Below, piece after piece: positions 9,762 through 63,237 of a DNA stretch of 64,000 nt. The notes under the pieces were generated by a model. That model saw only the letters and a program-made list of their open reading frames with translations. It was not told the origin of the DNA and searched no databases. How positions within the stretch are numbered: the stretch's first letter is position 1; every line of letters begins with the position of its first letter. The translations under genes and the position numbers were made by a program. The stretch is taken from positions 180,987 through 244,986 of the IMG/VR virus record IMGVR_UViG_3300045256_000050, one strand, 5' to 3'.

Positions 9762-9849
9762 GGGACTCCTGTTACCTAGTTACGTCTTGCAAAATGACGT
9801 GGCTTTCGCTACCATATATAAGCAACCGCCTAATAATCTTGGAGCAGTC

Positions 9850-10236
9850 ATGAAAAAGTTGAAGAAGTGGTCTGAGGTTTACCCCCAGGGCACAAAGGAG
9901 GGGAACGAGGAGCAGAAGTTTTTCATCGCCCTCGCCCGTAACCCGAAGTTCGAATGGCGTTCTACCGGAATGATCGCCAAAGAGTCTGGCCTGACCCGTG
10001 AGCGGGTCGAAGAGATCATCCAGAAGTACGTTCAAATGGGACTCGTCATTCCTTCACCGAGTAAAGAGGAACATTGGGCCTATTGGGAGCGTGTTCCGAA
10101 CATGGTTAAGGACGACAGCAAGTCCCTCACCCAGAAGGATCAGAAGAAGCGGATCGAAAAGCAGATTCAGGGTTCGCCCGACATGTGGGAAGACGACGAC
10201 AAGGACGACACGGACCTTCTCGACGACGTGCAGTAA
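9850..10236 (+). CDS. Winged-helix/HTH-like protein with acidic tail
   Basis: WRSTGMIAKESGLTRERVEEIIQKYVQMGLV resembles a wHTH; GGAG SD. Confidence 0.55.
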   Translation: MKKLKKWSEVYPQGTKEGNEEQKFFIALARNPKFEWRSTGMIAKESGLTRERVEEIIQKYVQMGLVIPSPSKEEHWAYWERVPNMVKDDSKSLTQKDQKKRIEKQIQGSPDMWEDDDKDDTDLLDDVQ

Positions 10237-10241
10237 AGCAA

Positions 10242-10271
10242 AAAACCCTGGGGTGCGCACCCCAGGGTTTT
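10242..10271. terminator. Bidirectional terminator
   Basis: Perfect palindrome AAAACCCTGGGGTGCGCACCCCAGGGTTTT between convergent genes. Confidence 0.85.
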
Positions 10272-10293
10272 CGTATGAATGTGAAGTATGATA

Positions 10294-10521
10294 TTACTTC
10301 AACGGCGAATCGCCGGTCTTGTCCTTGACGGTCTTGACGCCCTTAGCGTTCTTCAAGTCAAGGTAGGCCGAAGCCGAAGTCGGTGCAAAGTATGCGTCCG
10401 GGTACTGGCTGCGAACGTAGCCGTCCGGGTACTGACCACGGATACCAGAGCGGTGCGTGTTTTCCACGGTCGCAGGCAAGGTCAGGTTGTTGGCATCGCA
10501 CCATTGGTGGAAATCTAGCAT
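10294..10521 (-). CDS. Small putative internal virion protein (CTS-like N-terminus)
   Basis: Starts MLDFHQWCDAN; GAGGGAG SD; TATATA upstream at 10557. Confidence 0.6.
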   Translation of the reverse strand: MLDFHQWCDANNLTLPATVENTHRSGIRGQYPDGYVRSQYPDAYFAPTSASAYLDLKNAKGVKTVKDKTGDSPLK

Positions 10522-10587
10522 GCTACTCCCTCATTGGTTTGTGTAAGCTTACCTTTTATATACGGCTCTCAGGAATTTTTTTCGACC

Positions 10588-11532
10588 ATGACCAATAATC
10601 CATCCGTTGAAATCGAGGAAATCAACGAGGAGACTCCGATCACTACGGGCTGCGTGTTCTGCGAGAAAACCGTCTCGATTTTCAAGGAAGAATACGATCA
10701 GAACCGGGCGGTCGGTCACGGCAACTTCTACTGTGCCTTCTGCATCCGTAACGGGCACCACCACGCCGACGCCCTGAAACACAAGCTGATCCTGTCCTTC
10801 CGAGGCGTCATCGGGTTTTACTACTGGCAGTTGTACCAGAACCCGAACCGCACTATCTATCTCTCTGAGATCGAATCTTGCGTGAGAGATCATGCGAACG
10901 TTGGATTACAGCACCCGGCCTTCGCCTACGACCCGGAGACGCTGAACTGGTACATCGATTTCCGCCTCGTCGGCAACACCCGGCACAAGTTCCCGATCAA
11001 AACCGTCCACGACAACATCGACTTCATTATGGAATGCTTCCAGTTGCAAAAGCGTGTCCCGCACCTGCACGTCAAGACGTTCCACGAGAAGTTCACCCAG
11101 GCCATCGACCTGTACCACCAGCAGCGACAGCGGCCGAAGGGCAAGAAGGTTCTCTGCCCGACCTTCGTCAACTGCGGCTCCTTTCGAGCCGATATGGATT
11201 TCGAAAGCACAAAGACCCTTCCCACTTTTTTTTTTAGTACAGACGTAGCGGGCGAGAACGCCGTCAACCTCACCGCCGTCAACGCCCACGAAGAGGGCGT
11301 GAAAGAGAAAGAGGCGGGCCAGCCCCGGATCGTCATCAACGTCAAAGAGAAGGACGGCTGTTTCGAGGCTCTTGTGGAACTACCCGGCCTGAAGGCTACC
11401 AAGCTCGTCCGGTCGGACGGCAACACCGTGTACCCGAACAAGGCGTCCCTGACCAGCGGCATCCGTGCCCTGGAACGCAAGATGGGGATGAAGTTGGAAG
11501 TCAGCTACCCGAAGCGGGTAGCTGCGAAGTGA
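10588..11532 (+). CDS. Hypothetical protein with CxxC pairs; internal T10 tract
   Basis: CVFC and CAFC near the N-terminus; homopolymer at 11226-11235. Confidence 0.6.
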   Translation: MTNNPSVEIEEINEETPITTGCVFCEKTVSIFKEEYDQNRAVGHGNFYCAFCIRNGHHHADALKHKLILSFRGVIGFYYWQLYQNPNRTIYLSEIESCVRDHANVGLQHPAFAYDPETLNWYIDFRLVGNTRHKFPIKTVHDNIDFIMECFQLQKRVPHLHVKTFHEKFTQAIDLYHQQRQRPKGKKVLCPTFVNCGSFRADMDFESTKTLPTFFFSTDVAGENAVNLTAVNAHEEGVKEKEAGQPRIVINVKEKDGCFEALVELPGLKATKLVRSDGNTVYPNKASLTSGIRALERKMGMKLEVSYPKRVAAK

Positions 11533-13849: not shown

Positions 13850-13901
13850 GTTACCTCCACTAAATACAGTAGTGATTTCCACTATGAATCGGAGGTAACA
13901 T

Positions 13902-14144
13902 ATGGGTTGTGGTTGCAGTGGCGGTCGTCGGACCGGCCCGTCGAGAACGCCTGCTCTCCGTCCGGCGGCGGCAACGCCCCGTCCGGTGAACACTGGTCTT
14001 ACGTCAGCGGCCAGCCCGGCTGAGATTCGGGCGTTGGGCCTTCAGCAGAACACCGCTCCGAAGTCGGCCGTCCGCATGGACGCCGAGCGTCGTCGCATCG
14101 AGAAGTTGAAGCGGGACGCCATCCGGGCGAAGTTGCAAAAGTAA
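13902..14144 (+). CDS. Small basic protein with MGCGC N-terminus
   Basis: GGAGGT SD; TAAATA at 13861; first gene of a virion-type operon. Confidence 0.7.
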   Translation: MGCGCSGGRRTGPSRTPALRPAAATPRPVNTGLTSAASPAEIRALGLQQNTAPKSAVRMDAERRRIEKLKRDAIRAKLQK

Positions 14145-14476: not shown

Positions 14477-15565
14477 ATGGCCCTACTATTCATCGAAGGC
14501 TTCGACACAATGAATTCCCCGTCTACCGACCCGGCTAACCACACCGGGTTGAAGTGGGACTTCACGCAGATCAACGTCAGCACCAGCAACCGATTCACAG
14601 GTAGCGGCAATTGCATCGCCGACGGCTCTCGTGGCAACTTCGTCGCACGCAACATCGGCCAGAACCTCTCCGCAGGCGTGATTGGCTTTGCTTACAATCC
14701 GGGCATGTCCCTGAGCAACCTGTACAAAGCCAACATGGTCGTGTTCATGGACGGCGACCTGACTTCGACCGTACAGTTCGGCCTGTACATTGACAACAAC
14801 CGTAAGTTGAACTTGTTCCGGGGCGACCACAGCAACACGCTGGGTACGACCACTTATGTCTTGACTCAGAACCAGTGGCACTTCATCGAGTTGAAGTTTG
14901 CGATCAACAACAGCATCTCGACGGGAGACGTGATTCTTTACGTCAACGGGTCGAACGTCCTCCAGTTGGCGAACGGCACCAACACCCGTGCTACCGCCAA
15001 CAACTACGTCACCGGCTATCGCTTCAACGGTGCGGTGCCCGCTTTCGGCAGTGCAGGTGATTCGGTTTGGGCTATCGACGACCACTACCTCTTAGACTTG
15101 ACCGGATCGACAAACAACGCTCCGCTCGGCAACTGTCGTGTGATTACCCTTCGGCCGAACGGGAACGGGAACAGCAGTCAATGGGTCGGCAGTGACGGCA
15201 ACTCGGTTAACAACTACCAACAGGTAGACGACCCGACCGGCCCCTTCGACTTCGATTCGACTTATAATGAGTCGGGCAATGTGGGCGATAAGGACACCTA
15301 TTCGTTCGACGACCTGCCCGCCACAACCAACACAGTGTTCGGGGTTCAGTCCAACATCTTTGCTAAGAAGACCGATACAGGAACGAGGACGATCAATCAC
15401 GTCACCCGCATCGGCGGTACGGACTACGACGCCACGGCGACGGGAGATTTAACTTCGGGTTACTTGGACTACCGCACGGTCATGGACGTGAAACCTTCCG
15501 ACGGTACAGCGTGGACTGTATCTGATATCAACAATGCTGAGTTCGGAGTTAAGGTAAATAGCTAA
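14477..15565 (+). CDS. Virion protein with ConA/LamG-like beta-sandwich
   Basis: MALLFIEGFD start, QWHFIELKF, LYVNG, IDDHYLLD; N/T/G-rich composition typical of phage tail lectins. Confidence 0.7.
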   Translation: MALLFIEGFDTMNSPSTDPANHTGLKWDFTQINVSTSNRFTGSGNCIADGSRGNFVARNIGQNLSAGVIGFAYNPGMSLSNLYKANMVVFMDGDLTSTVQFGLYIDNNRKLNLFRGDHSNTLGTTTYVLTQNQWHFIELKFAINNSISTGDVILYVNGSNVLQLANGTNTRATANNYVTGYRFNGAVPAFGSAGDSVWAIDDHYLLDLTGSTNNAPLGNCRVITLRPNGNGNSSQWVGSDGNSVNNYQQVDDPTGPFDFDSTYNESGNVGDKDTYSFDDLPATTNTVFGVQSNIFAKKTDTGTRTINHVTRIGGTDYDATATGDLTSGYLDYRTVMDVKPSDGTAWTVSDINNAEFGVKVNS

Positions 15566-15567: not shown

Positions 15568-17340
15568 ATGACCGCCAGGATAACAGAAACTACGGTCGAA
15601 GTCCTGGCGGCTGGTGACGCTAAGGCCAGGACGACAGACGTTGCGGTCGAGATTTTGGCCGCTGGCGATGCGAAGGCACGCACCACCGAAATCACGGTGG
15701 AGGCTCTTACTGCTGGCGATGCGAAGGCACGCACCACCGAACTCTCTGTAGAAGTTCTCCTCATTTCGGAAACCCGTGCCCGTGTTACCGAGGCTACGGT
15801 CGAAGTTCTAGCCGTTACGATTAACGAATACAGCGACACTGGCTCGGGCGGTGCCGCTGTTGGCGGCGTGGCACTCCTGCCGACCCGTTGGTTCAACACG
15901 GCGTCCGGTGGTGCTGTCGTAGCCGGTGCCGCCAACGCAGAGTTCATTCTGACTGCATCTGGCGGCGTGGTCGCAAGTAGTTCGGCAACGAACACTGTTA
16001 TCCTCACGAGAACCGCTTCCGGCGGTGTCGTTGGCGGGGCTACCACTACTGTTCGACTCATCCGCCCGACGATCATTGCTTCGGGTGGTGTGGTTGGTGC
16101 GGGCGTTGCTTTCGTTAGAACCTACATCCCAGGCCGGGGCGGTGCGGTTGGCGGGGGTACGGCTCTTGTTCAATCCGCAGTTGCTTACATTAGTGCATTC
16201 GGCGGTGCCCGTCCGGGCGGGCGTGCCCTGAATGCTCAAGTCTACGGCCCCTACCGTCCCACCGGCGGTGCCCGGTTGGGTGGTACGGGCGTGCCACTTA
16301 TCTTCATCTTGGCACAGGGCGGGGCTGTCGGTGCCGGTGTTGCAAGAGTTGGCTGGTACGTCAAGCTCCGAGGCAGTGGCGGCATAGTCGCTGCCGGTTC
16401 GGCCGACAACAACATCTACGACTCTGCCCGTGGTGGAGCAGTCCTCGGCGGCACAGGTCGGGTCGCCTACCGTGCCAACGTTCAATTCGCTGCCGACGGG
16501 ATCAAAGGCGGCGGTACAGCCCGTGTTTACAAATGGGGCGATGATATCGGTCAAGGCGGTGCCCGCCCCGGTGGTTCGGCACGGGTCACTCACTTCCTTT
16601 ACCGAGTCGGCAGCGGCGGTGCCCGACCGGGTGGGGCCGCACGCTTGCTGTCTCGGACCTTCGATGTCGGGACTGGCGGTGCCGTGTGTGCGGGTCAGGC
16701 ACGAGTGGGTAAACTTTACGTCAACGTTGCCACCGGCGGTGGCGTGTGTGGCGGTATTGCGATCCAGGCTCTTACATCCGACAACGGCGTCATCAGCGGC
16801 TCGGGCGGTGTGCGTGGCGGTGGGATTAGTCGAAATACTGAGTACATGTACCGGACCGCCTCTGGCGGGGCGGTCAGCGGCAGCACGGCCACGATCCGAA
16901 AGATTACGAGACTCACGGCGACTGGCGGCGTAGTCGTTAGCGGTTTCAGTCTGTCTGAAGTAAGAATCTACGGTAAGGGCGGGGCGGTCCTGGGCGGGTC
17001 GAACGTCAACAACCACTTCATGTATGTAACGGCGAGCGGCGGGGCTGGTGTTCTGAGCGGTCAGAACATTAACACCGACATCGACTTCACCCCGAAGGCA
17101 TGCCGTCCGCCTCAGAACGAGGCTGGCATGTGTTGCAAGAAGGACAAGCGTGTATCGACACGGGTGTCGAAGCTGGAAGTGACGAATGGTCTGGCAGACG
17201 GCGTGGTGGCAGCTTCCGTCAACTGCGTCCTGCGTCGGCGGTTCAAGCTCGCCAACTCGATCTACAGTAACTCGGATAAGTTCCAGAAACGGAAGCGGCC
17301 TCCGCAGCGGTTGAGAAATACAATGACTTATTCGTCTTAA
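15568..17340 (+). CDS. Gly-rich repeat virion/fibre protein
   Basis: Five 17-aa ARxTExxVEVL repeats, then about 21 (S/T)GGAVxGG units of 18-23 aa, then a Cys-containing C-terminal domain. Confidence 0.8.
   Translation: MTARITETTVEVLAAGDAKARTTDVAVEILAAGDAKARTTEITVEALTAGDAKARTTELSVEVLLISETRARVTEATVEVLAVTINEYSDTGSGGAAVGGVALLPTRWFNTASGGAVVAGAANAEFILTASGGVVASSSATNTVILTRTASGGVVGGATTTVRLIRPTIIASGGVVGAGVAFVRTYIPGRGGAVGGGTALVQSAVAYISAFGGARPGGRALNAQVYGPYRPTGGARLGGTGVPLIFILAQGGAVGAGVARVGWYVKLRGSGGIVAAGSADNNIYDSARGGAVLGGTGRVAYRANVQFAADGIKGGGTARVYKWGDDIGQGGARPGGSARVTHFLYRVGSGGARPGGAARLLSRTFDVGTGGAVCAGQARVGKLYVNVATGGGVCGGIAIQALTSDNGVISGSGGVRGGGISRNTEYMYRTASGGAVSGSTATIRKITRLTATGGVVVSGFSLSEVRIYGKGGAVLGGSNVNNHFMYVTASGGAGVLSGQNINTDIDFTPKACRPPQNEAGMCCKKDKRVSTRVSKLEVTNGLADGVVAASVNCVLRRRFKLANSIYSNSDKFQKRKRPPQRLRNTMTYSS
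15661..15741 (+). repeat. Intragenic direct repeat, 30 nt x2, 51-nt period
   Basis: GCTGGCGATGCGAAGGCACGCACCACCGAA at 15661 and 15712. Confidence 0.9.
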
Positions 17341-18772: not shown

Positions 18773-19092
18773 TGCCCAGCCCAGAAGACTTGAAGCCGTT
18801 CGTGAATGACATTGCCAATGCGGCGGTGCATTTCGGGGTTTCGGAACGGACGGTGCGTCGGTGGCTCCACGCCAGCGGGTTGACCGAGAAGAAGAGTGGC
18901 TGGGGGCCGAAGCTAAACAAGTCTCAGGTGAACGAGGTTCACCGGCTCGACCGGGAGGGCGTCAGGATCGTCGATATCGCCAAGATCATGAACGTGTCCC
19001 ACGTTGCCATCAGTAAAATCCTCAACGGCCGGACCCACACCCCGAAGGGCACGGACACGGCCATCGTTTCTGTTATCTACAACACGAATTAA
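18772..19092 (+). CDS. Double HTH DNA-binding protein
   Basis: AAVHFGVSERTVRRWL and IVDIAKIMNVSHVAISKILNG. Confidence 0.8.
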   Translation: MPSPEDLKPFVNDIANAAVHFGVSERTVRRWLHASGLTEKKSGWGPKLNKSQVNEVHRLDREGVRIVDIAKIMNVSHVAISKILNGRTHTPKGTDTAIVSVIYNTN

Positions 19093-19580
19093 CGGCCCGG
19101 CGGCTGGTACGGACCCTTGCGGGCGTCCTGTTCCGACTGCGGCGGCAGGTAGAGGTATTGGACGCAGGCGGTGATGGCCGGTAGGTACGCCCCCGTGCTG
19201 GCGAACGACTTCGGGAAGATGTTGCGCTTCGGGGCGGTGTAAAACCCGGCCTCGAAGCACTGTTGGTATTTGTTCGGGAAGCTGATCTTGCAGCCGAACC
19301 GCTTGGGGTGGCCGGTGCGTTCGCACTGGCGGTCTTTGTATACCCGGCGGACGATGGCCGTCCCGGAGATGTCGAGGACGCCGCCGTCTGTGGTGGCCGT
19401 CTTGTTGGCCGAGATCACGTTCACTTCGGCTGTGCCGCTCATATTCGCTCCCCCATCACCGTAAAAGTAGCCGTGACCGGCAAGCGAAGCGATGAGGGTC
19501 GTCCGTTGCTGTTGGGTTTGGCTCGCTGCCAAGAGGACGAGCAATTGAAGAATCGTTGCGTATTCGCTTGCGGTGGGCAT
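19089..19580 (-). CDS. Short member of the Gly-repeat virion protein family
   Basis: Two GG-repeat units plus Cys-rich C-terminus with GAYLPAITAC; TAACTA 4 nt before ATG. Confidence 0.6.
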   Translation of the reverse strand: MPTASEYATILQLLVLLAASQTQQQRTTLIASLAGHGYFYGDGGANMSGTAEVNVISANKTATTDGGVLDISGTAIVRRVYKDRQCERTGHPKRFGCKISFPNKYQQCFEAGFYTAPKRNIFPKSFASTGAYLPAITACVQYLYLPPQSEQDARKGPYQPPGR

Positions 19581-19678
19581 ACTTTAGTTACTCGGAAAAG
19601 GCAGAAATTCGGGTTGAGCGGATAAATAAACTGTCAAGCGGTATATAGAAACAGCGTCCGATGAAGGAGACACAATCT

Positions 19679-20926
19679 ATGATGAGTTACAAAGCATGGC
19701 GGACCATCAACCAGAAGTTGATGAATGAGTCTGCTCTTGGTACTTCGACCCTGGGCCTCAAGACGCCTGCTTCGTTGGGCATCACTGGAAGCAAGCTTGC
19801 TGAGATGGGTTTCCCACCACCCGAGGGCGAAGACGATGATGACCTGATGGGTCATGATGACGGCACCGAGTCGGACATCGACCCGGATGGCGACGGCGAC
19901 GTGGATGTTCCGGGTGCTGGCCCGGACCTAGACCCGGATCAAGATGCCGATGAGCTTCACGGCATGGACGACCCGGCGATGCTCGCTCTCTTGGGTGACG
20001 ACGACGGCGAACAGGGCGATGATGAAGTTGCACCGGAAGGTGACGACGCATCGGCTCTCGGCGGCGACGACGGCATGATGGGCGGCGACGAGGACGAGTT
20101 CTCGTTCGACCCGGCCGACCTGGGTGACGACGCTCACGCAGTTCCCGACATGGGCAAGTCGGCCGACCTGAGCAACCTGCTCGGCGGCATGGGCGTGTCC
20201 CCGCATGACCAAGCCCCGGACATGGGCTTCGGCGACGAAGGCGATGAGGGTGCTGACATCAGCAGCCTGTTCGGTGGTGCTGGCGACGAAGGCGATGAGG
20301 GTGGCGAAGACGCCGCTCCGGCTAAGGGTGCCAACCCGTTCGGCGGCGAAGACGAGGGCGACGATGACTCCGCTCCTCAAGGCGAAGCCGACGATGACAA
20401 CATCGAAGACGAACTCGACAGCGACATGGACGACGACGATTCCGACGACGCAGAGTCCGACGAGGGCGGCGACAAGGAGTCGGAGTCCGATGACGACAAG
20501 AAGTTCATGGGCAAGGGCTGGTGCAACAAGATGATGAAGAAGGAAGGGAAGGAGTTCCCGGCTTTCTTGAAGAAGGGTAAGGACAAGGACGACAAGAAGG
20601 GCGGTAAGAAGGCTCCCCCGTTCGCCAAGAAGGGTGAGAAGAAGAAGGACGACAAGGGTCCGAAGCCGTTCGAGTTGTTCAAGAAGGGTGGCAAGAAGAA
20701 GGAAGAGAAGGTTGACGAAACCTCGTTCTTCCGCAGCCTCACCAAGCAGGCCGCTGGCGACGTTCGCAAGCTGAAGGAAGACTCCCTGGTGGCGTCCCCG
20801 AAGCAAGCCAAGCGTGAGCCGGGTCCGGGCGAAGTGGGCTACGCCCCGAGCGGTCGGGTTGGTCAACTCCCGAGCGTTGCGTCCTACAACGAGTGGAAGG
20901 CCAAGAACTTCCCGAAGAAGAAGTAA
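19679..20926 (+). CDS. Acidic disordered protein with Lys-rich tail; putative prohead core/internal protein
   Basis: MMSYKAWRTINQKLMNES leader, long D/E/G tract, K-rich block; AAGGAGA SD; TAAATA 19623 and TATATA 19642. Confidence 0.7.
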   Translation: MMSYKAWRTINQKLMNESALGTSTLGLKTPASLGITGSKLAEMGFPPPEGEDDDDLMGHDDGTESDIDPDGDGDVDVPGAGPDLDPDQDADELHGMDDPAMLALLGDDDGEQGDDEVAPEGDDASALGGDDGMMGGDEDEFSFDPADLGDDAHAVPDMGKSADLSNLLGGMGVSPHDQAPDMGFGDEGDEGADISSLFGGAGDEGDEGGEDAAPAKGANPFGGEDEGDDDSAPQGEADDDNIEDELDSDMDDDDSDDAESDEGGDKESESDDDKKFMGKGWCNKMMKKEGKEFPAFLKKGKDKDDKKGGKKAPPFAKKGEKKKDDKGPKPFELFKKGGKKKEEKVDETSFFRSLTKQAAGDVRKLKEDSLVASPKQAKREPGPGEVGYAPSGRVGQLPSVASYNEWKAKNFPKKK

Positions 20927-22877: not shown

Positions 22878-22972
22878 ATCGTATCTATCCGGTCGGGTCT
22901 GTCAATCCCCGGCGAATAAAAATTTCCGGTTTTCCGTCCGAAAACAGAACCCAGCCGACTAACTAATACCAG

Positions 22973-30679: not shown

Positions 30680-30726
30680 AGTCTTCCTCCTCACGTTAGA
30701 CTTGTCCAGCGTGTTATCTATGGCTA

Positions 30727-32754: not shown

Positions 32755-32802
32755 GAGTATTCCTCCTAAGATACGTTATTTATCCTCAACCGGCTCAATC
32801 TT

Positions 32803-33528: not shown

Positions 33529-33541
33529 GAGGGTATCTACG

Positions 33542-35743: not shown

Positions 35744-35784
35744 AAGGTGCCTCCTCCTCCCGAGAAAAGACACCTTATCTATGC

Positions 35785-36282
35785 TTATCTACCGGCAATC
35801 TTCCCGAACACCTGGGTGTAGTACGGTTCGCCCTCTTCGTTAAGGGAGCAAGCCACCCCAATATGCGTGTAATTCCCGAGGATATTGCGGCGGTGGCCGC
35901 TGGAGTTCATCCACCCCTCGACGACGGCGGACGGCGGGTAATTCCAGGCGATGTTCTCGGCGATGCCGCTCCACGGGAAGCCAGTCTTGTTGACACGTTC
36001 CGTGACGGTACGCTCGCCGGGCACGTTCAGTTCGTGCGACAGCTTGCTCAGCCGGGCCATGTTGAACGACTGGATACCAGCCGCTTCCATCAGACGTGGG
36101 TCGATCTCAAGCGGTGGGAGGCCGTGGTGTGCCCGGTTCTGGTTGGTTTCACTGACGCAAGCCTCCACACTGAAGGCGGCGTTAGTCGTAACCTTGTTTT
36201 CTTTGCTTTTGCAGCCGGGGAGGACGGCCAGTGAAGTTCCCGCTGCGATCACAGCGAGAACGAGGAAGAGTTTCTTCATCAT
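35785..36282 (-). CDS. CAP/SCP-domain lipoprotein
   Basis: Lipobox-like LPGC; NQNRAHHGLPPL, AENIA, WMNSSGHRRNIL. Confidence 0.92.
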   Translation of the reverse strand: MMKKLFLVLAVIAAGTSLAVLPGCKSKENKVTTNAAFSVEACVSETNQNRAHHGLPPLEIDPRLMEAAGIQSFNMARLSKLSHELNVPGERTVTERVNKTGFPWSGIAENIAWNYPPSAVVEGWMNSSGHRRNILGNYTHIGVACSLNEEGEPYYTQVFGKIAGR

Positions 36283-36320
36283 AGAGATACCTCTTGCTAG
36301 AGTCGAGGTATCTACGCTTG

Positions 36321-38409: not shown

Positions 38410-38506
38410 GACAAGTTATCGCCTTTTCCGTAAGGAATCTTGAGTTTGCGTCGAAAAGCTCCCCAGCAAAGTAAATAGAGTACACAGAGTTTGGAGGAGA
38501 AGCAAT

Positions 38507-41683: not shown

Positions 41684-41712
41684 GATACCCCTTTTGTGTA
41701 GAGGTATATAGC

Positions 41713-42654: not shown

Positions 42655-43050
42655 TTATTTAGCAGCGGCTTTGGCGGGTTTGGCTTCTTCGAGGATCGCA
42701 TTGACGTTGTGAATCTCGATCAGGGCCAGCTTCTTGTCGGTGAACTGCTTGGCTTCCTGCAAGAGCTTCGGACGGACGCCGAGGAGAACACGGTCGCCGA
42801 CGTTGAGCTTCACGTCTTCCTGCTTGACGCACGGGCCGAAGGCCACGATGTAAGCCTGCTCGCTGCCGACCTTAGCGTCTTCCTTCAGGTAGAGCTTGGT
42901 CGCCAGTACGGCTTCCGGGTTAATGAGTTCTACGAGAATCGTAGAGCCAGCCGGGCGGATGCCGGTGATCGCCGGGACGCTTGCTACGCTCGTCTCTTCC
43001 TTGTCATTCTTGCCGGGGAGGAAGACGCCACCATCTGTTTTTTTAACCAT
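42655..43050 (-). CDS. groES: GroES/Cpn10-like co-chaperonin with N-terminal extension
   Basis: IRPAGSTILVE, AYIVAFGP, LNVGDRVL, VNAILE match the Cpn10 strand order. Confidence 0.7.
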   Translation of the reverse strand: MVKKTDGGVFLPGKNDKEETSVASVPAITGIRPAGSTILVELINPEAVLATKLYLKEDAKVGSEQAYIVAFGPCVKQEDVKLNVGDRVLLGVRPKLLQEAKQFTDKKLALIEIHNVNAILEEAKPAKAAAK

Positions 43051-45932: not shown

Positions 45933-46057
45933 TGTATTCTCCTATGTGGAAGTTGGGTTAAGTTTCACAATTCTCGCCTTGCTACAATTAGATACGCACC
46001 ACTTCTAATTCTGTTCTTGTCCTGGGATAATCCCTCGCTCCCTGGATAACTACCTCT

Positions 46058-52281: not shown

Positions 52282-53197
52282 CGCTATCCTCTTGTCGATT
52301 GAAGAAATACTGGTTGATATCGGCGTGCATCCCCGGCTTGTCGGTGGCCCATTCCCACACGTTGTTGACAAGCTTGATGTCCTCAGCAGGATTGTAATCG
52401 TACTTGAGGATGATGTCGTGCCGGTCCATGTACGCACGGTTCTTCAGGCTGCCGTGCCACAGGTGGTAGATATCAATAGGTAGATAGTCAAGAACGAGCG
52501 GTTTCTTCTGGAACTCGTCCCGCCATGCACCCATGTGCTTCTTCATGTGTTCATTAAACTTCTGAGCGTAGCCGTGGATGTCCCAGGAGTTCAGGCAGCA
52601 GTCCACCATGTAGGTGTCGCCGCTTCCGATGATGTTCCGGTCATACACGCCACCCAAGTCCTCGAAGAACTTCCGGTTCGCACCCCAGGCGAAGCCCGGC
52701 GACGAGAACGGCAAGTCCTTCTTCTTCCGGCGCTCCAGCCAGTTCTTGTGGATCAAATACTGCCAAATCACGCCCTGGAACATGAGTTCCTTCGTGCCCT
52801 GCCAAGACCGATGGCCCCGAGGGAGGTAGTTGATCCGCTTGAAAAGCTGGATGATGTGCGCCTTCTTGAACTTCTCGACCGCCTGCTCGACCCAATCGTC
52901 AGCCGAGAACAGAACATCGCAGTCCAGCCAGCCGAAATACTCACAGCTACTCGGCAGTTGGGACAGCCCGTAGTTAATCAACCGCTCTTTTTGCCACATC
53001 ACGCTGTTGCCACGCAGCCGGGCTACGTTGTGGGTGGTCGGAATCTCGAAATCGTTGTCGCCGAACGCCATCTCCACCGTCAGCAAGTTCACACCCTGCC
53101 GCTTCAGGTTTTCTGCAAACGTGAAGTAGTTTTTCAGGATGTTCTTGTACCCCGCCGGGTTGAAGAACGTAGTGATGGCCCAGAATTTGTTGTTCAT
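52274..53197 (-). CDS. GT-A fold glycosyltransferase-like protein
   Basis: ITTFFNP, WQKERLINYG, WLDCDVLF (DxD), PGFAWG, GSGD, HLWH; GAGGAGG SD; TAGATA upstream. Confidence 0.75.
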   Translation of the reverse strand: MNNKFWAITTFFNPAGYKNILKNYFTFAENLKRQGVNLLTVEMAFGDNDFEIPTTHNVARLRGNSVMWQKERLINYGLSQLPSSCEYFGWLDCDVLFSADDWVEQAVEKFKKAHIIQLFKRINYLPRGHRSWQGTKELMFQGVIWQYLIHKNWLERRKKKDLPFSSPGFAWGANRKFFEDLGGVYDRNIIGSGDTYMVDCCLNSWDIHGYAQKFNEHMKKHMGAWRDEFQKKPLVLDYLPIDIYHLWHGSLKNRAYMDRHDIILKYDYNPAEDIKLVNNVWEWATDKPGMHADINQYFFNRQEDSDE

Positions 53198-53294
53198 AGC
53201 TCCTCCTCTGTAAACAACTGCGTTATCTAAGCTTATTACGGAAACAAAATCGGAGGACGCTGACCCCTATATACCTGAACAAGAGAGGGCTTCA

Positions 53295-53720
53295 ATGAGC
53301 GTAATTCAACAACTTTTCAGTGACCCGATTTCGGTGCCGATCCCCCTGGAGTTTCAACCGACGGGTACGTTCACCGAGTCGGCTGTGGTTGACAACACGA
53401 CGGACCGATTTATTTCGGCCGACATCCAGCTTTCCGTTCAGCCGGACAACGGCAGTCCGGGCGGCGACGGATTCATTAAGGTCTACCTGATGCGGTCGCT
53501 GGACAACGTGGAGTGGGACGACCCGACGGAAGACTGCACCCTGTTGGCCGTGTGGACGGCGAACCAGGGCGGGGTGAACTTCACGCACAGCATTGACACA
53601 GACGTGGTGGGCAACCTGCCGCCGTATTGGAAGATTCTGGTCGAGAACCGGACCGGGACGGCTTTCGATGGGACTGGCAACTCGCTGAGTTTCGTCGGAA
53701 AGAAGTTCGAAACCGTCTAA
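53295..53720 (+). CDS. Putative virion beta-sandwich protein
   Basis: TATATA at 53268; beta-rich; heads a virion-type operon. Confidence 0.6.
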   Translation: MSVIQQLFSDPISVPIPLEFQPTGTFTESAVVDNTTDRFISADIQLSVQPDNGSPGGDGFIKVYLMRSLDNVEWDDPTEDCTLLAVWTANQGGVNFTHSIDTDVVGNLPPYWKILVENRTGTAFDGTGNSLSFVGKKFETV

Positions 53721-59800: not shown

Positions 59801-59806
59801 TAAATA
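59801..59806 (+). promoter_or_regulatory. T4-like late promoter core (representative of about 20 copies)
   Basis: TAAATA; variants TAGATA, TATATA and TAACTA recur in intergenic gaps upstream of virion-type genes. Confidence 0.6.
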
Positions 59807-59810
59807 AAAC

Positions 59811-60443
59811 ATGACTAGCTTCAAAGAGTTCTTCGAGGCCAACGACCCGATGACGGGCATCCCGCACACCGTCAAGACGGCGACCGTGCCCGCCCCCGCA
59901 ACACCGCCCGCTCCTCGCAACACGATGACGCAACAGATGGATCAGCGTGTCCAGACGGGCAAAGGCTACGAGGCCAAGATTATTCAGAAGCTCATCTCGG
60001 GCGGGCTGAAGATCACGCCCGTGACCGGCCGACAGGACATGTTCGATAAGATCGACGGCATCTGGGAGAACGGCCCGGCCGGGTCCGGCGGGATGCAGAT
60101 CAAGTACCGTGACAGCGGCTACGACATCCTGATGGAAGTTCGGAAGGGTAGCAACCCAGGCCGGGACATGGTGGGCAAGAGCGTGTACTACACGGTCGTC
60201 CCGAAGGACGGTGAGTTCGCCTACATCTTCAAGACGGTGGACTTGAAGAAGCTGGTGCAGGACGCATTGAATGAGCTACAGCAGGACGGCGGCTTCGGCG
60301 GGAAGCGGGAGTTTCATTCGAGCGATCAGGTCGAACTGCGGCAGACCCGTGACCCGGCCGACAACACGCCGAAAATCATGGCCTTCATCCCGATTGACGT
60401 GCCTGTTCCGATTCGCCGCCAGCGAGTCAACCTGTTCAAATAA
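59811..60443 (+). CDS. CTS-like leader + PD-(D/E)xK nuclease-like fold protein
   Basis: MTSFKEFFEAN leader; GYEAKI...DKIDG...MQIKYR; TAAATA 4 nt before ATG. Confidence 0.6.
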   Translation: MTSFKEFFEANDPMTGIPHTVKTATVPAPATPPAPRNTMTQQMDQRVQTGKGYEAKIIQKLISGGLKITPVTGRQDMFDKIDGIWENGPAGSGGMQIKYRDSGYDILMEVRKGSNPGRDMVGKSVYYTVVPKDGEFAYIFKTVDLKKLVQDALNELQQDGGFGGKREFHSSDQVELRQTRDPADNTPKIMAFIPIDVPVPIRRQRVNLFK

Positions 60444-60470: not shown

Positions 60471-60574
60471 CGTTATCATCCAGAGGATGAACAGGCTCAC
60501 CATCCAGAAGATCATTAAGCCCAAGTCCTGTTTCCACGACAGCATTCGGTACAACTCTCGGTCGAGCCAATCCA

Positions 60575-61320: not shown

Positions 61321-61736
61321 TTCAAATGGCGAGCCATTGCCTTTCCAAAAGATTCGTCGCTGTACCAGCCGGTTTCACCCTTGTCGTAGTTGTGGCAGCC
61401 GAAATACTTGTCGGGGTCGCCCTCGACGGTGTACCGGGCCACCCAGCCGGATTCTTCATCCTTGTAGTCCACGTTCGGGTTGTCCCATGTCTCGTAAACC
61501 ACTTCGAGCTTGGCGATCAGGATTTCTTTGCCGTTCCGTTTCTTGAACAGCTTGTCGCCCCGCCGCTTGATCCCCTTCACGCCGTCGAACTCGGACAGAG
61601 CCTTGTCTACGGTTTCTTGGAGCGTCTTGCGACGTGCCTCTTCGTACTTGCGTGAGGCTTCTTCTCTCTCCTCACGCTTCTTCTGCTCGGCCTTCTGCTT
61701 CTTGATCTCTTCTTTGGCGAAGTCCAGTGCGCTCAT
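61317..61736 (-). CDS. Hypothetical protein
   Basis: From MSALDFAKEE; GAGG SD. Confidence 0.6.
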   Translation of the reverse strand: MSALDFAKEEIKKQKAEQKKREEREEASRKYEEARRKTLQETVDKALSEFDGVKGIKRRGDKLFKKRNGKEILIAKLEVVYETWDNPNVDYKDEESGWVARYTVEGDPDKYFGCHNYDKGETGWYSDESFGKAMARHLK

Positions 61737-61990
61737 ACGGCCCTCTTCTTTCCCAGCACTTCGCTGGTGTAGTCGAGCTTGTTGGAGTGCCCGCCGTCGC
61801 TGTGATAGAGCGACAGGAAGTTCCCCTTGATCTCGACTTCGATGTCCTCGGCGGCGAGGCGGTAGTCGGTGAACTCCGACCTGTCCGCCTCGTTGTAGAC
61901 CCGGAAGAAGTATTCCTTGCTGAAGGGGTTGTAGAGTAAGAACCCCGTCACGCCTTCGGCCGACACTTCTTGGAGAGGAATGTTGTTCAT
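61733..61990 (-). CDS. Hypothetical protein
   Basis: From MNNIPLQ; AGGAG SD. Confidence 0.55.
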   Translation of the reverse strand: MNNIPLQEVSAEGVTGFLLYNPFSKEYFFRVYNEADRSEFTDYRLAAEDIEVEIKGNFLSLYHSDGGHSNKLDYTSEVLGKKRAV

Positions 61991-62407
61991 CGTGTACTCC
62001 TGGCCCGCCCGTTTTCGACGAGCCATGCCCAGATTTCGTAGGAATCAACGCCGTTCATCCAACCCGGCACCCAATCCTCGGCAGAGCCGCCACCGGGCGT
62101 CGGGAAGTACCATAGCTGGGCGTTCTCGCCGCAGCCGCAGTATTCGTCGCAGTAGTTAAGGCCGGTTATCGCCGAGATGCTGCATTTCCAATACCGGGGC
62201 AGCACGTCCTTCCGTAAGCTGGAAGAACGCTTCGACGCCGACCTTTTCGATTTCTTGACGGACTTTTTCTTGCCAACCTTTGCGTTGGCGTTCTTTGAGA
62301 TGGTGGAGGAGTTCTTCGGCGGGGATTTCGTACTCGAAGACGACTTCATCGGGGTCCATCCCTTGCAGTGCGTCAAGCAAATCCTTTGCTTGTACTTGAA
62401 CTTTCAT
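61987..62407 (-). pseudogene. Apparently frameshifted hypothetical gene
   Basis: N-half in frame 62156-62407 and start-less C-half in frame 61987-62376; deleting one base near 62219 joins them. Confidence 0.4.
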
Positions 62408-62409
62408 AG

Positions 62410-62483
62410 TGCCGTCGGCGAGAGTTGAACTCGCAACATTCAGATTCTAAGTCTGACGACTCTGCCAGTTGGTCTACGACGGC
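62410..62483 (-). tRNA. tRNA-Leu(TAG) with short variable loop, no encoded CCA
   Basis: GCCGTCG/CGACGGC acceptor, GAC/GTC D-stem with TGG, TCAGA-CTTAGAA-TCTGA, 5-nt variable ATGTT, GCGAG-TTCAACT-CTCGC, A73; 74 nt. Confidence 0.92.
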
Positions 62484-62649
62484 AAGGGCGGCAGTTTTTG
62501 TAACCATCCGGGGCTGAACCCGGCAAGGACGTATGGGGCTTGTCTCCATCTGCCGCCTGTTCTCCCATTATCGGGTCGAGAAAAACTCGATGTTGAACAT
62601 CATTCGGAGTATAGCCGCCTACGTCAATGGCGTACCTTATATTAGCGTA

Positions 62650-62994
62650 TTAGCCGCAGATTGCAACTACAAATACGTCAGCTTCGCCTCGGTGTACTCG
62701 TCCACCAGCAGGCACCACTCCTCCAGTTCCCGCTGGACCGTTTTCTCCCACAAAGTCTGCTCGTCCTGCGACGGCATCTTCTTCTTGCGGTACTCGGCCC
62801 GGACCTGACGCATCGCCACCTTGCCCGCCAACGATGTCTCTTTGATACCGAAAATAGCCGGTCGGGAACTTGGTGCGTGCGGCCTCGCACAACCCGAGAA
62901 TCACCCGTTTGATCTCGGGTTGCTTCTCAAGCCACTCGACTCCTCGACGGAGTTCCTTGTCCAGTGAAGTGTGTTTACCTTTCTTATCACTCAT
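62650..62994 (-). CDS. Hypothetical protein
   Basis: From MSDKKGKH. Confidence 0.45.
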   Translation of the reverse strand: MSDKKGKHTSLDKELRRGVEWLEKQPEIKRVILGLCEAARTKFPTGYFRYQRDIVGGQGGDASGPGRVPQEEDAVAGRADFVGENGPAGTGGVVPAGGRVHRGEADVFVVAICG

Positions 62995-63237
62995 GGCGGC
63001 ACCAGGATGTATTGTAGGAGAAAAACCCGAAATCACAACGCTTCCTTCACCCATTCTACACGATGTTATCGTATAACATCGGCGTCGAACTTACAAAAAG
63101 GAGAGATGTTATGAAAAGGAAGGGTTAGCGAACAGTTGAACCGAAATCTGGGTAAATCTACGGAAACCTCAAGGAAAATCTTTCCAAATTCGTGATTTCC
63201 AGACCAGAAATTCAGGGTTAGCCCTCTAAATAACATC

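What the first reader, a model, noticed from the sequence alone, without database searches (positions are those of the whole stretch)
9815..63232. Recurrent late-promoter-like motif TA(A/G/T)ATA / TAACTA, often 4-7 nt before a start codon with no SD
Seen in a GC-rich background. TAAATA: 13861, 19623, 32777(-), 38472, 59801, 63227. TAGATA, all (-): 22882, 30715, 33534, 35776, 35786, 36309, 53224. TATATA: 9815, 10557, 19642, 41705, 53268. TAACTA: 19585(-), 22960, 27646, 46047. At 19585, 22882, 22960, 33534, 46047, 59801 and 63227 the motif is only 4-7 nt from the ATG. Known: T4 late promoters are TATAAATA with no -35. Inference: a degenerate gp55-type late regulon with near-leaderless mRNAs, which marks late and virion genes among the unknowns.
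Basis: partly seen in the sequence, partly recalled or inferred. Interest (0 to 1): 0.7.

Follow-up and report, generated by a model that had tools for sequence, protein, structure and literature searches.

The report
Single-element phage promoter, often leaderless
The recurring TA-N-ATA hexamer is very probably the promoter of the non-early (likely late) genes of a huge T4-related phage from a hot-spring mat. In about a fifth of cases it sits 4-5 bases from the start codon, so those mRNAs would have no leader. The TAACTA variant is not supported.

Summary
The coordinates are exact and the core observation holds. TA[AGT]ATA occurs 38 times in the window against 11.0 ± 3.2 in dinucleotide shuffles. 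In oriented upstream windows across the 245-kb contig, TATATA and TAGATA are the two most enriched of all hexamers, above the Shine-Dalgarno words. The sites behave like promoters. They point towards the downstream gene 26:4, are dense in divergent gaps, and are absent from convergent gaps. They are kept upstream of orthologous genes in dozens of related phages. TAACTA is not enriched, and two of its four sites precede mobile-element genes.

There are two architectures. In one, the motif lies 15-42 nt upstream with an SD in between. In the other, the motif is followed by N4-5 and then ATG, with no SD and a pyrimidine at -1. The second type recurs in a 595-kb relative (56 genes) but not in T4. 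It is enriched for proteins whose N-termini resemble the T4 capsid targeting sequence.

The contig encodes a 189-aa sigma with domain 2 only, so a gp55-like mechanism is plausible. However, gp33 and a gp45-type clamp were not found, and homology to gp55 is marginal. "Late" timing is inferred, not shown, because no RNA data exist. I class this as a new variant of a known kind.

The parts
9815..9820 (.). Palindromic TATATA in a divergent gap. It lies 29 nt before the ATG of 9850-10236(+) and 53 nt before 9192-9761(-).
10557..10562 (.). Palindromic TATATA in a divergent gap. It lies 25 nt before 10588-11532(+) and 35 nt before 10294-10521(-).
13861..13866 (+). TAAATA 35 nt before the ATG of 13902-14144(+), with an SD between. 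The gap is divergent.
15555..15560 (+). TAAATA followed by N7 and the ATG of 15568-17340 (590 aa, no SD).
19623..19647 (+). Tandem TAAATA (19623) and TATATA (19642), 50 and 31 nt before the SD-led gene 19679-20926.
22882..22887 (-). TAGATA followed by N4 and the ATG of 22392-22877 (161 aa, no SD). The N-terminus MRFKTWLENE resembles the T4 capsid targeting sequence.
30715..30720 (-). TAGATA 35 nt before the SD-led protease gene 29702-30679.
32777..32782 (-). TAAATA 22 nt before the SD-led gene 32452-32754.
33534..33539 (-). TAGATA followed by N5 and the ATG of 32803-33528 (241 aa, no SD). The N-terminus MGFKEWLLLE is CTS-like.
35776..35791 (-). Two TAGATA copies 10 nt apart, 32 and 42 nt before the SD-led gene 35039-35743 (thioredoxin-like).
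36309..36314 (-). TAGATA 26 nt before gene 35785-36282.
38472..38477 (+). TAAATA 29 nt before the SD-led gene 38507-39268.
41705..41710 (-). TATATA 21 nt before the methyltransferase gene 41036-41683.
42656..42661 (-). TAAATA followed by N4 and the ATG of 41713-42651 (312 aa, no SD).
53224..53229 (-). TAGATA 26 nt before the SD-led gene 52274-53197.
53268..53273 (+). TATATA 21 nt before gene 53295-53720, in the same divergent gap as 53224.
59801..59806 (+). TAAATA followed by N4 and the ATG of 59811-60443 (210 aa, no SD). The N-terminus MTSFKEFFEA is CTS-like.
63227..63232 (+). TAAATA followed by N5 and an ATG at 63238. That ATG opens a frame of at least 254 codons that runs off the contig end.
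19585..19590 (-). TAACTA followed by N4 and the ATG of ORF 19089-19580. It may be a one-mismatch variant, but the word itself is not enriched.
22960..22965 (+). TAACTA followed by N7 and the ATG of an IS605-type transposase (22973-24136). I do not assign it to the promoter family.
46047..46052 (+). TAACTA followed by N5 and the ATG of a LAGLIDADG homing endonuclease (46058-46918). I do not assign it to the promoter family.

Best explanation
TA-N-ATA (TATATA and TAGATA most often, then TAAATA; TACATA is also used in relatives) is the single-element, -10-type promoter of this phage's non-early transcription programme.

Context. The phage is a huge member of the T4 superfamily. Its major capsid protein is gp23-like, and the 245-kb contig is about half of the genome.

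Proposed mechanism (inferred). Host core RNA polymerase is redirected by a phage-encoded minimal sigma of 189 aa. This protein has sigma regions 1.2 and 2 and no region 4. It is encoded outside the window, at contig 151027-151596(-). A sigma of this kind can read only a downstream element, which would explain why no -35 box is seen.

Two architectures use the same hexamer:
(a) The hexamer lies 15-42 nt before the ATG, giving a short 5' UTR that carries a Shine-Dalgarno sequence.
(b) The hexamer is followed by 4-5 nt and then the ATG. The transcript would begin at, or within a base of, the A of the AUG. That makes it a leaderless mRNA with no SD.

The programme is probably late. It heads the head, tail and tail-fibre operons. 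Class (b) is rich in proteins whose N-termini resemble the T4 capsid targeting sequence, which suggests packaged internal proteins.

What is shown: the enrichment, the orientation bias, the fixed spacing, conservation in relatives, the absence of SD in class (b), and the presence of the sigma. What is inferred: which factor reads the motif, the exact transcription start site, and the timing.
For: - Enrichment.
- Orientation: in co-directional gaps 26 motifs point towards the gene and 4 point away (p=6e-5). Density is 4.9 per kb in divergent gaps, 1.8 per kb in co-directional gaps, and 0 in 4.6 kb of convergent gaps.
- Distance: the distribution has two peaks, at 4-5 nt and at 18-35 nt.
- No -35 partner: there is no information upstream of the hexamer beyond weak AT-richness. 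Canonical sigma-70 sites in 29-49 kb number 4 against 6.6 ± 2.7 expected. TATAAT is depleted upstream (1 vs 3.1).
- Conservation: the motif is kept upstream of the gp15-like sheath stabilizer in 19/21 relatives (34/38 with looser start matching) and of a 133-aa gene in 23/23, while the flanks vary. Two control genes have it in 0/42 and 2/25.
- Replication: in the complete 595-kb relative LR756511, TATATA has z=10.3, and density is 9.0 per kb in divergent against 2.4 per kb in convergent gaps.
- Class (b), own contig: TANATA-N4/5-ATG occurs 21 times, and nearly all of these ATGs open long ORFs. All 12 called genes of this class lack an SD.
- Class (b), LR756511: 56 genes at N4/5. Of the 85 at N3-8, 84 start with ATG and 82 lack an SD.
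- Start-site context: the base before the ATG is a pyrimidine in 17/19 and 62/73 cases, against about 50-55% of all genes. This is the Y-1/R+1 start-site preference of RNA polymerase.
- Orthologous genes switch between the SD-led and the adjacent-promoter form in different relatives.
- Controls: T4 shows no such spacing peak, and this contig has no TATAAATA at all.
- The sigma: Pfam Sigma70_r2 only (31.9-33.3 bits). It hits phrog_351 at 1.4e-8 and phrog_234, the family of T4 gp55, at 7.6e-6. More than 1100 homologues of 175-190 aa exist on contigs up to 690 kb. In the AF2 model, residues 1-144 match sigma-A/B domain 2 at Z 10-11.4, and the C-terminal tail is disordered.
- Late or virion genes behind the motif: two tail fibres, the tail sheath stabilizer and operon starts. 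CTS-like N-termini occur in 7/19 and at least 30/73 class (b) genes (T4 CTS is MKTYQEFIAE, PMC8442874). A gp21-type prohead protease is present.
- Geometry: the T4 late box spans -13 to -6 (PMC2988020). An N5 spacer therefore puts +1 on the A of the ATG.
Against: - There are no transcript 5' ends. No RNA run holds this phage.
- The link between this sigma and this motif is circumstantial. The complete relative has three region-2-containing ORFs, and half of this genome is missing.
- gp33 (phrog_254) was not found here or in LR756511, although the T4 positive control scored 1.6e-33. No gp45-type or beta-type clamp was found.
- A profile of this sigma family does not find T4 gp55. hhalign against gp55 gives E=0.02 and probability 2%.
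- The motif also precedes non-structural genes: a protease, a methyltransferase, a thioredoxin-like gene and an RNA-ligase-like gene.
- In many relatives it precedes the sigma gene itself (27/44).
- The baseplate-hub gene lacks the motif and carries a different conserved upstream motif.
- With T4 geometry, an N4 spacer would put +1 on the T of the ATG unless the start shifts by one base.
- The TAGATA upstream of the sheath gene lies in codons of a small conserved ORF, so that site is ambiguous.
- Gene starts come from my own crude gene caller.
Confidence: 0.6

Rival explanations
1. The motif is a real promoter, but it is read by a different factor: another phage sigma or a polymerase encoded in the missing half of the genome, or a modified host holoenzyme. 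Alternatively it drives a general 'everything but early' programme rather than a strictly late one.
For: - The complete relative carries three Sigma70_r2 ORFs.
- The contig is about 48% complete.
- The motif precedes many non-structural genes, and in relatives the sigma gene itself.
- The baseplate hub uses another conserved upstream motif.
Against: - A promoter without a -35 element fits a sigma that lacks region 4.
- No phage RNA polymerase domains were found, although the T7-type search had no working control.
- The minimal sigma is the most conserved transcription protein of the clade, at 55-65% identity over more than 1100 homologues.
- The motif is kept across the same clade.
Confidence: 0.22
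2. The hexamers are ordinary -10 boxes of the host's primary sigma (TATAAT-like), so these are host-type promoters rather than phage-specific ones.
For: - The hexamer is AT-rich and TA-initial, and it sits at promoter-like positions.
- The phage sigma's domain 2 resembles cellular sigma-A domain 2.
Against: - The last base is A in every enriched form, whereas T at -7 is the most conserved base of sigma-A boxes (established knowledge).
- TATAAT itself is depleted upstream (1 vs 3.1).
- No -35 partner is seen, and -35/-10 pairs are not enriched.
- With sigma-70 geometry (start about 7 nt after the hexamer), the N4-5 class would start inside or beyond the ATG.
- The motif is conserved across relatives with GC from 31% to 58%, which presumably have different hosts.
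Confidence: 0.08
3. In the close-spaced class the hexamer is not a promoter. It is an A/U-rich, SD-independent ribosome-loading element that occupies the usual SD position.
For: - It sits exactly where an SD would sit (4-5 nt before the ATG), and these genes lack an SD.
- Several of these genes follow another gene on the same strand with a gap of 20 nt or less.
Against: - The same hexamer recurs 15-42 nt upstream of genes that have their own SD.
- It is concentrated in divergent gaps and absent from convergent ones.
- Palindromic TATATA serves both sides of divergent gene pairs.
- The pyrimidine at -1 before the A is a transcription-start signature, not a ribosome signature.
Confidence: 0.06
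4. The pattern is a by-product of AT-rich intergenic composition, or of the reader selecting sites.
For:
- Intergenic GC is a little lower than genomic GC (53.6% vs 58%).
Against: - Shuffles that preserve the dinucleotide content of the same intergenic or upstream segments never approach the observed counts.
- There is strand bias and fixed spacing.
- The motif is conserved at orthologous sites.
Confidence: 0.02

Closest known systems
Bacteriophage T4 late promoters (TATAAATA at -13 to -6) read by gp55 with gp33 and the gp45 sliding clamp (PMC2988020, PMC7892883)
   Same: - Recognition is of a single downstream element with no -35 box.
- TA-N-ATA equals the 3' six bases of the T4 box (TAAATA) with a free third base.
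- The specificity factor is a small protein of about 185-189 aa carrying only a sigma domain-2-like module.
- The phage has a T4-type head module: a gp23-like MCP and a gp21-type protease.
- The motif heads virion operons.
   Different: - The upstream TA of the 8-bp box is not conserved, and the contig has no TATAAATA at all.
- gp33 and a gp45-type clamp were not detected here or in a complete relative.
- The sigma is closer to cellular sigma-A domain 2 than to gp55.
- T4 has no class of promoters abutting start codons.
Rak2-like jumbo phages CBB and GAP32: a gp55-like sigma with a predicted late motif ATAAATA before structural genes, and no gp33 or gp45 (PMC5259590)
   Same: - They are jumbo myoviruses with a minimal gp55-like sigma.
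- They have an in-silico late motif of the T4 type upstream of virion genes.
- The clamp and co-activator partners are not detectable.
   Different: - The consensus differs (ATAAATA vs TA-N-ATA with T or G favoured at position 3).
- No leaderless class is reported there.
- The host and clade differ. This sigma family has no close homologue in cultured phages: a tblastn search finds only LR756511.
Minimal sigma factors of 'group 2' jumbo phages, which have a gp23-type capsid (Iyer et al. 2021, PMC7824862)
   Same: The phage has a gp23-type MCP, no RNA polymerase of its own, and a phage-encoded minimal sigma that is assumed to recruit host core polymerase.
   Different: - That survey reports a gp33 orthologue in group 2 phages; none was found here with the gp33 PHROG.
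- No promoter was assigned to the minimal sigmas there.
Leaderless genes of Deinococcus-Thermus, where a -10 box (TANNNT) sits next to the ORF (PMC12340547, PMC4007540)
   Same: - A -10-type hexamer sits at a fixed short distance from an AUG.
- There is no SD.
- An SD-led class coexists in the same genome.
   Different: - There the box is the host sigma-A TANNNT.
- Here the last base is A, the spacer is shorter (4-5 nt), and the arrangement belongs to a phage clade with its own sigma.
- The host of this phage is unknown.
T4 internal proteins carrying the capsid targeting sequence MKTYQEFIAE (PMC8442874, PMC3012670)
   Same: - Diverse, otherwise unrelated small proteins share only an N-terminal decapeptide of the form M-x-x-F/Y-x-E-F/W-hydrophobic-x-E.
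- A gp21-type prohead protease is encoded nearby.
   Different: - The similarity is a pattern match only. Packaging and cleavage are untested.
- The numbers are much larger: about 10 in this half genome and dozens in LR756511.
- Most are expressed from the adjacent-promoter (leaderless) arrangement.

Membership tests
T4 gp55/gp33/gp45 late transcription system | The specificity factor is a small protein with only a sigma domain-2-like module and no region 3 or 4. | tested here: met
   The protein has 189 aa. Pfam finds Sigma70_r2 only, at residues 86-142. In the AF2 model, residues 1-144 match sigma region 1.2 plus 2, and the tail is disordered.
T4 gp55/gp33/gp45 late transcription system | The factor belongs by sequence to the gp55 family. 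| tested here: inconclusive
   phrog_234 scores E=7.6e-6, against 2.9e-69 for T4 gp55 itself. The generic sigma family phrog_351 scores better. phrog_234 also matches bacterial control genomes. hhalign gives E=0.02 and probability 2%. A family profile does not find gp55 in T4.
T4 gp55/gp33/gp45 late transcription system | The promoter is an 8-bp TATAAATA box at -13 to -6 with no -35 element. | tested here: inconclusive
   No -35 element is seen. The core TA-N-ATA matches the last six bases of the T4 box. The first TA is not conserved, and TATAAATA occurs 0 times in the contig.
T4 gp55/gp33/gp45 late transcription system | A gp33 co-activator is present. | tested here: not met
   phrog_254 has no match at E<=1 in the contig or in the complete relative LR756511, while the T4 control scores 1.6e-33. 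Caveats: gp33 is poorly conserved, and half of this genome is missing.
T4 gp55/gp33/gp45 late transcription system | A gp45-type sliding clamp acts as activator. | tested here: not met
   phrog_223, PF09116 and the beta-clamp family PF02768 have no match in the contig or in LR756511. No positive control in a phage genome was run for these searches.
T4 gp55/gp33/gp45 late transcription system | Transcription is late and coupled to replication. | not testable with these tools
   No RNA data set holds the phage.
Leaderless mRNAs | The promoter element lies at a fixed short distance from the start codon, with no SD. | tested here: met
   The spacing peaks at N4 and N5. SD is absent in 12/12 genes here and 82/85 in LR756511.
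Leaderless mRNAs | The start codon is AUG. | tested here: met
   84 of 85 genes in LR756511 start with ATG, against 93.5% of all genes. The own-genome set was searched with ATG only.
Leaderless mRNAs | The transcript 5' end lies at the A of the AUG. | not testable with these tools
   Support is indirect only: a pyrimidine at -1 in 17/19 and 62/73 cases.
T4-type CTS-bearing internal head proteins | The N-terminal decapeptide resembles MKTYQEFIAE. | tested here: met
   Examples are MTSFKEFFEA, MGFKEWLLLE, MRFKTWLENE and MLTFKKFMMAE. The T4 CTS sequence is taken from PMC8442874.
T4-type CTS-bearing internal head proteins | A gp21-type prohead protease is present. | tested here: met
   PF03420 scores E=7e-27 at contig 123561-123974.
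T4-type CTS-bearing internal head proteins | The proteins are packaged into the head and the CTS is cleaved off. | not testable with these tools
   This needs virion proteomics.

The most novel reading that the evidence does not exclude
A whole clade of huge T4-superfamily phages (more than 1000 contigs carry the same minimal sigma) may run a late programme in which dozens of genes are transcribed as leaderless mRNAs from promoters that abut the start codon. These genes include a large and diverse set of capsid-targeted, probably ejected, proteins. Because they have no SD, and often sit directly behind another gene, they would be translated only from their own promoter-proximal transcript and would stay silent on read-through RNA. 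Promoter choice would then act as a combined transcriptional and translational timing switch.
Probability: 0.3. Interest if true: 0.65.

Novelty: new variant of a known kind. Interest (0 to 1): 0.5.

Why it matters
Huge phages are known almost only from metagenomes, and their gene-expression programmes are uncharted. This motif gives a simple sequence rule, TA-N-ATA oriented towards a start codon, either with an SD 15-40 nt downstream or 4-5 nt from an ATG. The rule can be used in several ways.

- It corrects start-codon calls.
- It delimits operons.
- It flags likely late and virion genes among ORFans. In particular it flags a large set of proteins with T4 CTS-like N-termini, which are candidates for injected anti-defence proteins.
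- It nominates a conserved minimal sigma as a testable specificity factor.

If the leaderless class is confirmed, it would be the first systematic use of leaderless mRNAs described for a jumbo phage in the literature I searched. phiKZ and AR9 show none (PMC8244752, PMC5312081).

Tried and rejected
- RNA evidence: two run searches found only DNA runs (hot-spring and microbial-mat metagenomes) and unrelated wastewater RNA at 5-9% of words. No TSS mapping was possible.
- Host inference from the IS605-type transposase: the best matches in reference genomes are 45% identity or less and come from scattered phyla, which is uninformative.
- Megablast of 20 kb of the window against cultured and deposited phages: no match.
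- Phage RNA polymerases: no RpoC domain was found. The T7-type search had no working control, so it shows little.
- TAACTA as a family member: rejected on statistics.
- The sheath-upstream TAGATA as a footprint: set aside, because it lies in the codons Thr-Arg-Tyr of a small conserved ORF that my gene caller missed. The use of the rare AGA codon (5% of Arg codons) hints at a dual constraint but proves nothing.
- A conserved purine at the fifth base after the motif in the SD-led class: no clear signal.
- The 115-aa HTH protein as a gp33 orthologue: no similarity to T4 gp33.
- Two 376-aa ORFs suspected to be duplicates: unrelated.
- Pfam and PHROG searches left most motif-bearing window genes unannotated.
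- I did not run complex prediction on the sigma with DNA, because the tool gives no verdict for DNA partners.

Full report
**What the window is.** The window is the last 64 kb of a single 244,986-bp IMG/VR virus contig. The contig is linear, CheckV rates it about 48% complete, and its GC content is 58%. The DNA is held by hot-spring and microbial-mat metagenomes. Nothing similar at the DNA level exists among deposited phages.

The contig encodes a T4-type virion module:
- a gp23-like major capsid protein, which matches 2,610 phage records at about 30% identity;
- a gp21-type prohead protease;
- a large terminase;
- a tail sheath, a sheath stabilizer and four tail-tube paralogues;
- a baseplate wedge and hub, and a tape-measure-like protein.

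The nearest deposited genome is the 595-kb uncultured phage LR756511, with 75% identity in the capsid protein. The object is therefore about half of a huge T4-superfamily phage. Gene coordinates below come from my own codon-usage gene caller (332 genes, 90% coding) and should be treated as approximate.

TA[AGT]ATA is strongly enriched:
- It occurs 38 times in the window (palindromes counted twice) against 11.0 ± 3.2 in dinucleotide-preserving shuffles.
- In all intergenic DNA of the contig it occurs 66 times against 17.7 ± 4.5.
- I tested all 4,096 hexamers in oriented windows of up to 75 nt upstream of non-early genes, each window shuffled with its own dinucleotide content. TATATA (21 vs 2.7, z=11.4) and TAGATA (19 vs 3.1, z=9.0) rank first and second, above every Shine-Dalgarno word. 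TAAATA has z=3.7. The canonical TATAAT is depleted (1 vs 3.1).

TAACTA is not enriched. The window has 10 against 7.0 ± 2.5, upstream windows give z=1.5, and relatives show nothing. Two of its four listed sites precede an IS605-type transposase and a LAGLIDADG endonuclease.

**Does it behave like a promoter?** Four lines of evidence say yes.
- Orientation. In gaps between co-directional genes, the non-palindromic forms point towards the downstream gene 26 times and away 4 times (p=6e-5).
- Gap type. Motif density is 4.9 per kb in divergent gaps, 1.8 per kb in co-directional gaps, and zero in 35 convergent gaps totalling 4.6 kb.
- Distance. The distance to the start codon has two peaks, one at 4-5 nt and one at 18-35 nt.
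- No second element. Aligning 45 sites shows no upstream box, only weak AT-richness 15-20 nt upstream. Sigma-70-type -35/-10 pairs are not enriched in 29-49 kb (4 vs 6.6 ± 2.7).

About 49 of 330 genes carry the motif within 45 nt of the start. These are spread over the whole contig except the first 17 kb.

**Conservation in relatives.** I fetched 80 loci around homologues of the phage sigma described below.
- The gp15-like sheath stabilizer has TA-N-ATA upstream in 19 of 21 non-redundant relatives with comparable starts (34 of 38 with a looser criterion).
- A neighbouring 133-aa gene has it in 23 of 23.
- In both cases the flanking sequence varies freely.
- Two control genes from the same loci have it in 0 of 42 and 2 of 25.

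For the same orthologous gene, some relatives have the motif 14-22 nt upstream with an SD, and others have it 4-8 nt from the ATG with no SD.

One apparent footprint, upstream of the sheath gene, had to be set aside. There the TAGATA is the codon string Thr-Arg-Tyr of a small conserved ORF that my caller had missed.

In the complete genome LR756511 (GC 42%) the picture repeats. TATATA has z=10.3. Density is 9.0 per kb in divergent against 2.4 per kb in convergent gaps. Orientation is 108 to 62.

**The close-spaced class.** Across the contig, TA-N-ATA followed by 4 or 5 bases and an ATG occurs 21 times, or 23 including the two TAACTA cases. Almost all of these ATGs open long ORFs. Other spacings are rare. 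All 12 called genes of this class lack an SD.

In the window these sites are 22882(-), 33534(-), 42656(-), 59801(+) and 63227(+), plus 15555(+) at N7.

LR756511 has 56 such genes at N4/N5. Of the 85 genes at N3-8, 84 start with ATG and 82 lack an SD.

The base just before the ATG is a pyrimidine in 17/19 and 62/73 cases, against about 55% and 49% of all genes (p=0.0015 and 9e-11). This fits the general preference of RNA polymerase to start at a purine that follows a pyrimidine, which is established knowledge.

A scan free of gene calls shows the N4/N5 peak here and in LR756511, a small N5/N6 peak in Xanthomonas phage XacN1, and none in T4.

The T4 late box occupies -13 to -6 (PMC2988020). If TA-N-ATA corresponds to -11 to -6, an N5 spacer puts +1 exactly on the A of the ATG, and an N4 spacer is one base short. 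Together this argues for leaderless or nearly leaderless mRNAs, but no 5' end has been seen.

**What the close-spaced genes encode.** Two are tail-fibre-like. Many others are ORFans with no Pfam or PHROG match whose N-termini are alike:
- MTSFKEFFEA (59811);
- MRFKTWLENE (22877);
- MGFKEWLLLE (33528);
- MLTFKKFMMAE, MRFRDFIEQD, MLSFRAWFEV and MLTFRSFMER elsewhere on the contig.

A loose pattern match finds 7 of 19 such N-termini here and at least 30 of 73 in LR756511, against 7-8% of all genes. A stricter pattern finds 14 ORFs in the contig, of which I judge about ten to be real gene starts. Nine of those ten have the motif, eight of them within 8 nt.

The pattern resembles the T4 capsid targeting sequence MKTYQEFIAE. 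That decapeptide is the only feature shared by the diverse T4 internal proteins, and it is removed by the prohead protease (PMC8442874, PMC3012670). A gp21-type protease is encoded here.

This has two consequences. First, it fixes the start codon, because the conserved peptide begins at that Met. Second, it makes these genes good candidates for packaged, late-expressed proteins. Packaging itself is untested.

**Who reads the motif?** The contig encodes a 189-aa protein at 151027-151596(-), outside the window.
- Its only Pfam domain is Sigma70_r2.
- It hits a generic sigma PHROG at 1.4e-8 and the PHROG that contains T4 gp55 at 7.6e-6.
- It has more than 1,100 homologues of 175-190 aa at 55-65% identity, on contigs up to about 690 kb. 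A nearly invariant stretch covers regions 2.1-2.4.
- In the AlphaFold model (pLDDT 82.6), residues 1-144 superpose on domain 2 of sigma-A and sigma-B at Z 10-11.4. All 50 listed matches are RNA polymerase-sigma or sigma domain-2 entries, aligned to the sigma-factor chain. The last 19 residues are disordered.

A sigma without region 4 can read only a downstream element. This fits a promoter without a -35 box and parallels gp55.

The parallel stops there:
- The gp33 PHROG finds nothing here or in LR756511, while it finds T4 gp33 at 1.6e-33.
- No gp45-type or beta-type clamp was found.
- A profile of this sigma family does not detect gp55 in T4, and hhalign is marginal.
- LR756511 has three region-2 ORFs, so other sigmas may sit in the missing half of this genome.

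The sigma-motif link is therefore an inference from architecture and co-conservation.

**Is it late?**

For:
- The motif heads the long structural operon starting at 62.1 kb, the head-gene operon (a 610-aa gene, the prohead protease and the capsid gene) at 121.5 kb, the tail cluster at 143-146 kb and two tail-fibre genes.
- It is absent from the first 17 kb. That region has about 50 copies of a different long motif in front of small same-strand genes and looks like an early region.

Against:
- The motif also precedes a protease, a methyltransferase, a thioredoxin-like gene and an RNA-ligase-like gene.
- It precedes the sigma gene itself in 27 of 44 relatives, which would mean autoregulation.
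- The baseplate-hub gene uses another conserved upstream motif.

'Non-early, probably late' is as far as the evidence goes.

**Comparison with what is known.**
- T4-type late promoters and gp55 are textbook material.
- Predicted ATAAATA late motifs with a gp55-like sigma and no gp33 or gp45 have been reported for the jumbo phages CBB and GAP32 (PMC5259590).
- Minimal sigmas are a noted feature of jumbo phages with a gp23-type capsid (PMC7824862).
- Promoter-adjacent leaderless genes are well known in Deinococcus-Thermus (PMC12340547, PMC4007540).

What appears new is the combination. The consensus is different (TA-N-ATA, with no TATAAATA in the contig). It occurs in a very large uncultured clade. 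And it includes a sizeable leaderless class tied to CTS-like proteins. TSS maps of the jumbo phages phiKZ and AR9 show no leaderless transcripts (PMC8244752, PMC5312081). I found no paper in the searched library describing this for huge phages.

**Verdict.** The motif is real and very probably a promoter (about 0.85). It is probably read by the minimal sigma, and probably late (each about 0.55). The close-spaced class is probably leaderless (about 0.6). TAACTA should be dropped. This is a new variant of a known kind and is of moderate interest.

Noticed in passing
outside the window: contig (G000:C1) 302-16867, + strand; locus L001: About 50 copies of a long motif, (C/G)TGACACCGGCTG-N5-7-GYGTAAC, lie one in front of almost every small same-strand gene. 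The TGA is often the stop codon of the preceding gene, and some copies are followed by a GC hairpin. It looks like an early-region promoter or processing array. It is absent from the window and distinct from TA-N-ATA.
   Followed up: partly
LR756511 (loci L148-L177), mostly 0-50 kb: The 595-kb relative has an analogous array: AGCTGTAC occurs 134 times, 64 of them in the first 25 kb, usually right after a stop codon and 30-50 nt before the next start. It shares a GCTGT core with this contig's array.
   Followed up: partly
window 22392-22877(-), 32803-33528(-), 59811-60443(+); also contig 29344, 48652, 108136, 129031, 133081, 161061, 169556: This is a set of otherwise unrelated ORFan proteins whose first ten residues resemble the T4 capsid targeting sequence MKTYQEFIAE. 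There are dozens more in LR756511. They are candidate packaged or ejected proteins.
   Followed up: partly
window 888-2570 (-): A 560-aa reverse transcriptase with a C-terminal HNH domain (phrog_1423, 9e-103). This is the architecture of a group II intron protein.
   Followed up: no
window 22973-24136 (+) and 46058-46918 (+): An IS605-type transposase (phrog_506, 4.5e-125) and a LAGLIDADG homing endonuclease. Both are preceded by TAACTA. The best cellular relatives of the transposase have 45% identity or less, so it gives no clue to the host.
   Followed up: partly
window 62409-62483 (-): tRNA-Leu (anticodon TAG), the only tRNA in the window.
   Followed up: no
outside the window: contig 155423-156601 (+) and orthologues in loci L016-L092: The baseplate-hub gene lacks TA-N-ATA. 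Across about 25 relatives it carries another conserved upstream pattern, CATACTCT[TA]ATA about 45 nt upstream and CATAGTA just before the SD. This may be a second promoter class or a 5' UTR element.
   Followed up: partly
outside the window: contig 142628-142975 (-): A 115-aa helix-turn-helix protein lies divergent from a conserved palindromic TATATA. It has weak hits to sigma region 4 and 'late transcriptional activator' PHROGs and is not similar to T4 gp33.
   Followed up: partly
outside the window: contig about 145460-145685 (+): A small conserved ORF (about 70 aa, ending ...GLISTRYIPNNEVEKGE) just upstream of the sheath gene was missed by my gene caller. Its Thr-Arg-Tyr codons spell TAGATA, using the rare AGA codon.
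   Followed up: partly
outside the window: contig 148144-150705 (+): Four tandem tail-tube paralogues lie directly after the sheath gene.
   Followed up: no
outside the window: contig 152736-153539 (-): A 267-aa protein with PAS domains is encoded about 1 kb from the sigma gene, with one gene between them, and has TAAATA 26 nt upstream.
   Followed up: no
alignment A1 (sigma family), C-terminus: After a disordered linker, most homologues end in an acidic stretch followed by a terminal Trp (for example ...IDRDxxxW). This recalls the short C-terminal partner-binding epitopes of gp55 and gp33, but the partner here is unknown.
   Followed up: no
Xanthomonas phage XacN1, first 220 kb (loci L189-L199): XacN1 shows a small peak of TA-N-ATA followed by N5-6 and an ATG (7 and 4 cases), although it has no detectable homologue of this sigma. 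The adjacent-promoter arrangement may extend beyond the clade.
   Followed up: no
contig 129899(-)/130714(+) and other upstream regions: AAAGTAA / TTTACTT words are enriched upstream of genes that lack TA-N-ATA. At one divergent gene pair they accompany CTA(C/T)AATA followed by N4 and an ATG. This may be a further promoter or activator element.
   Followed up: no
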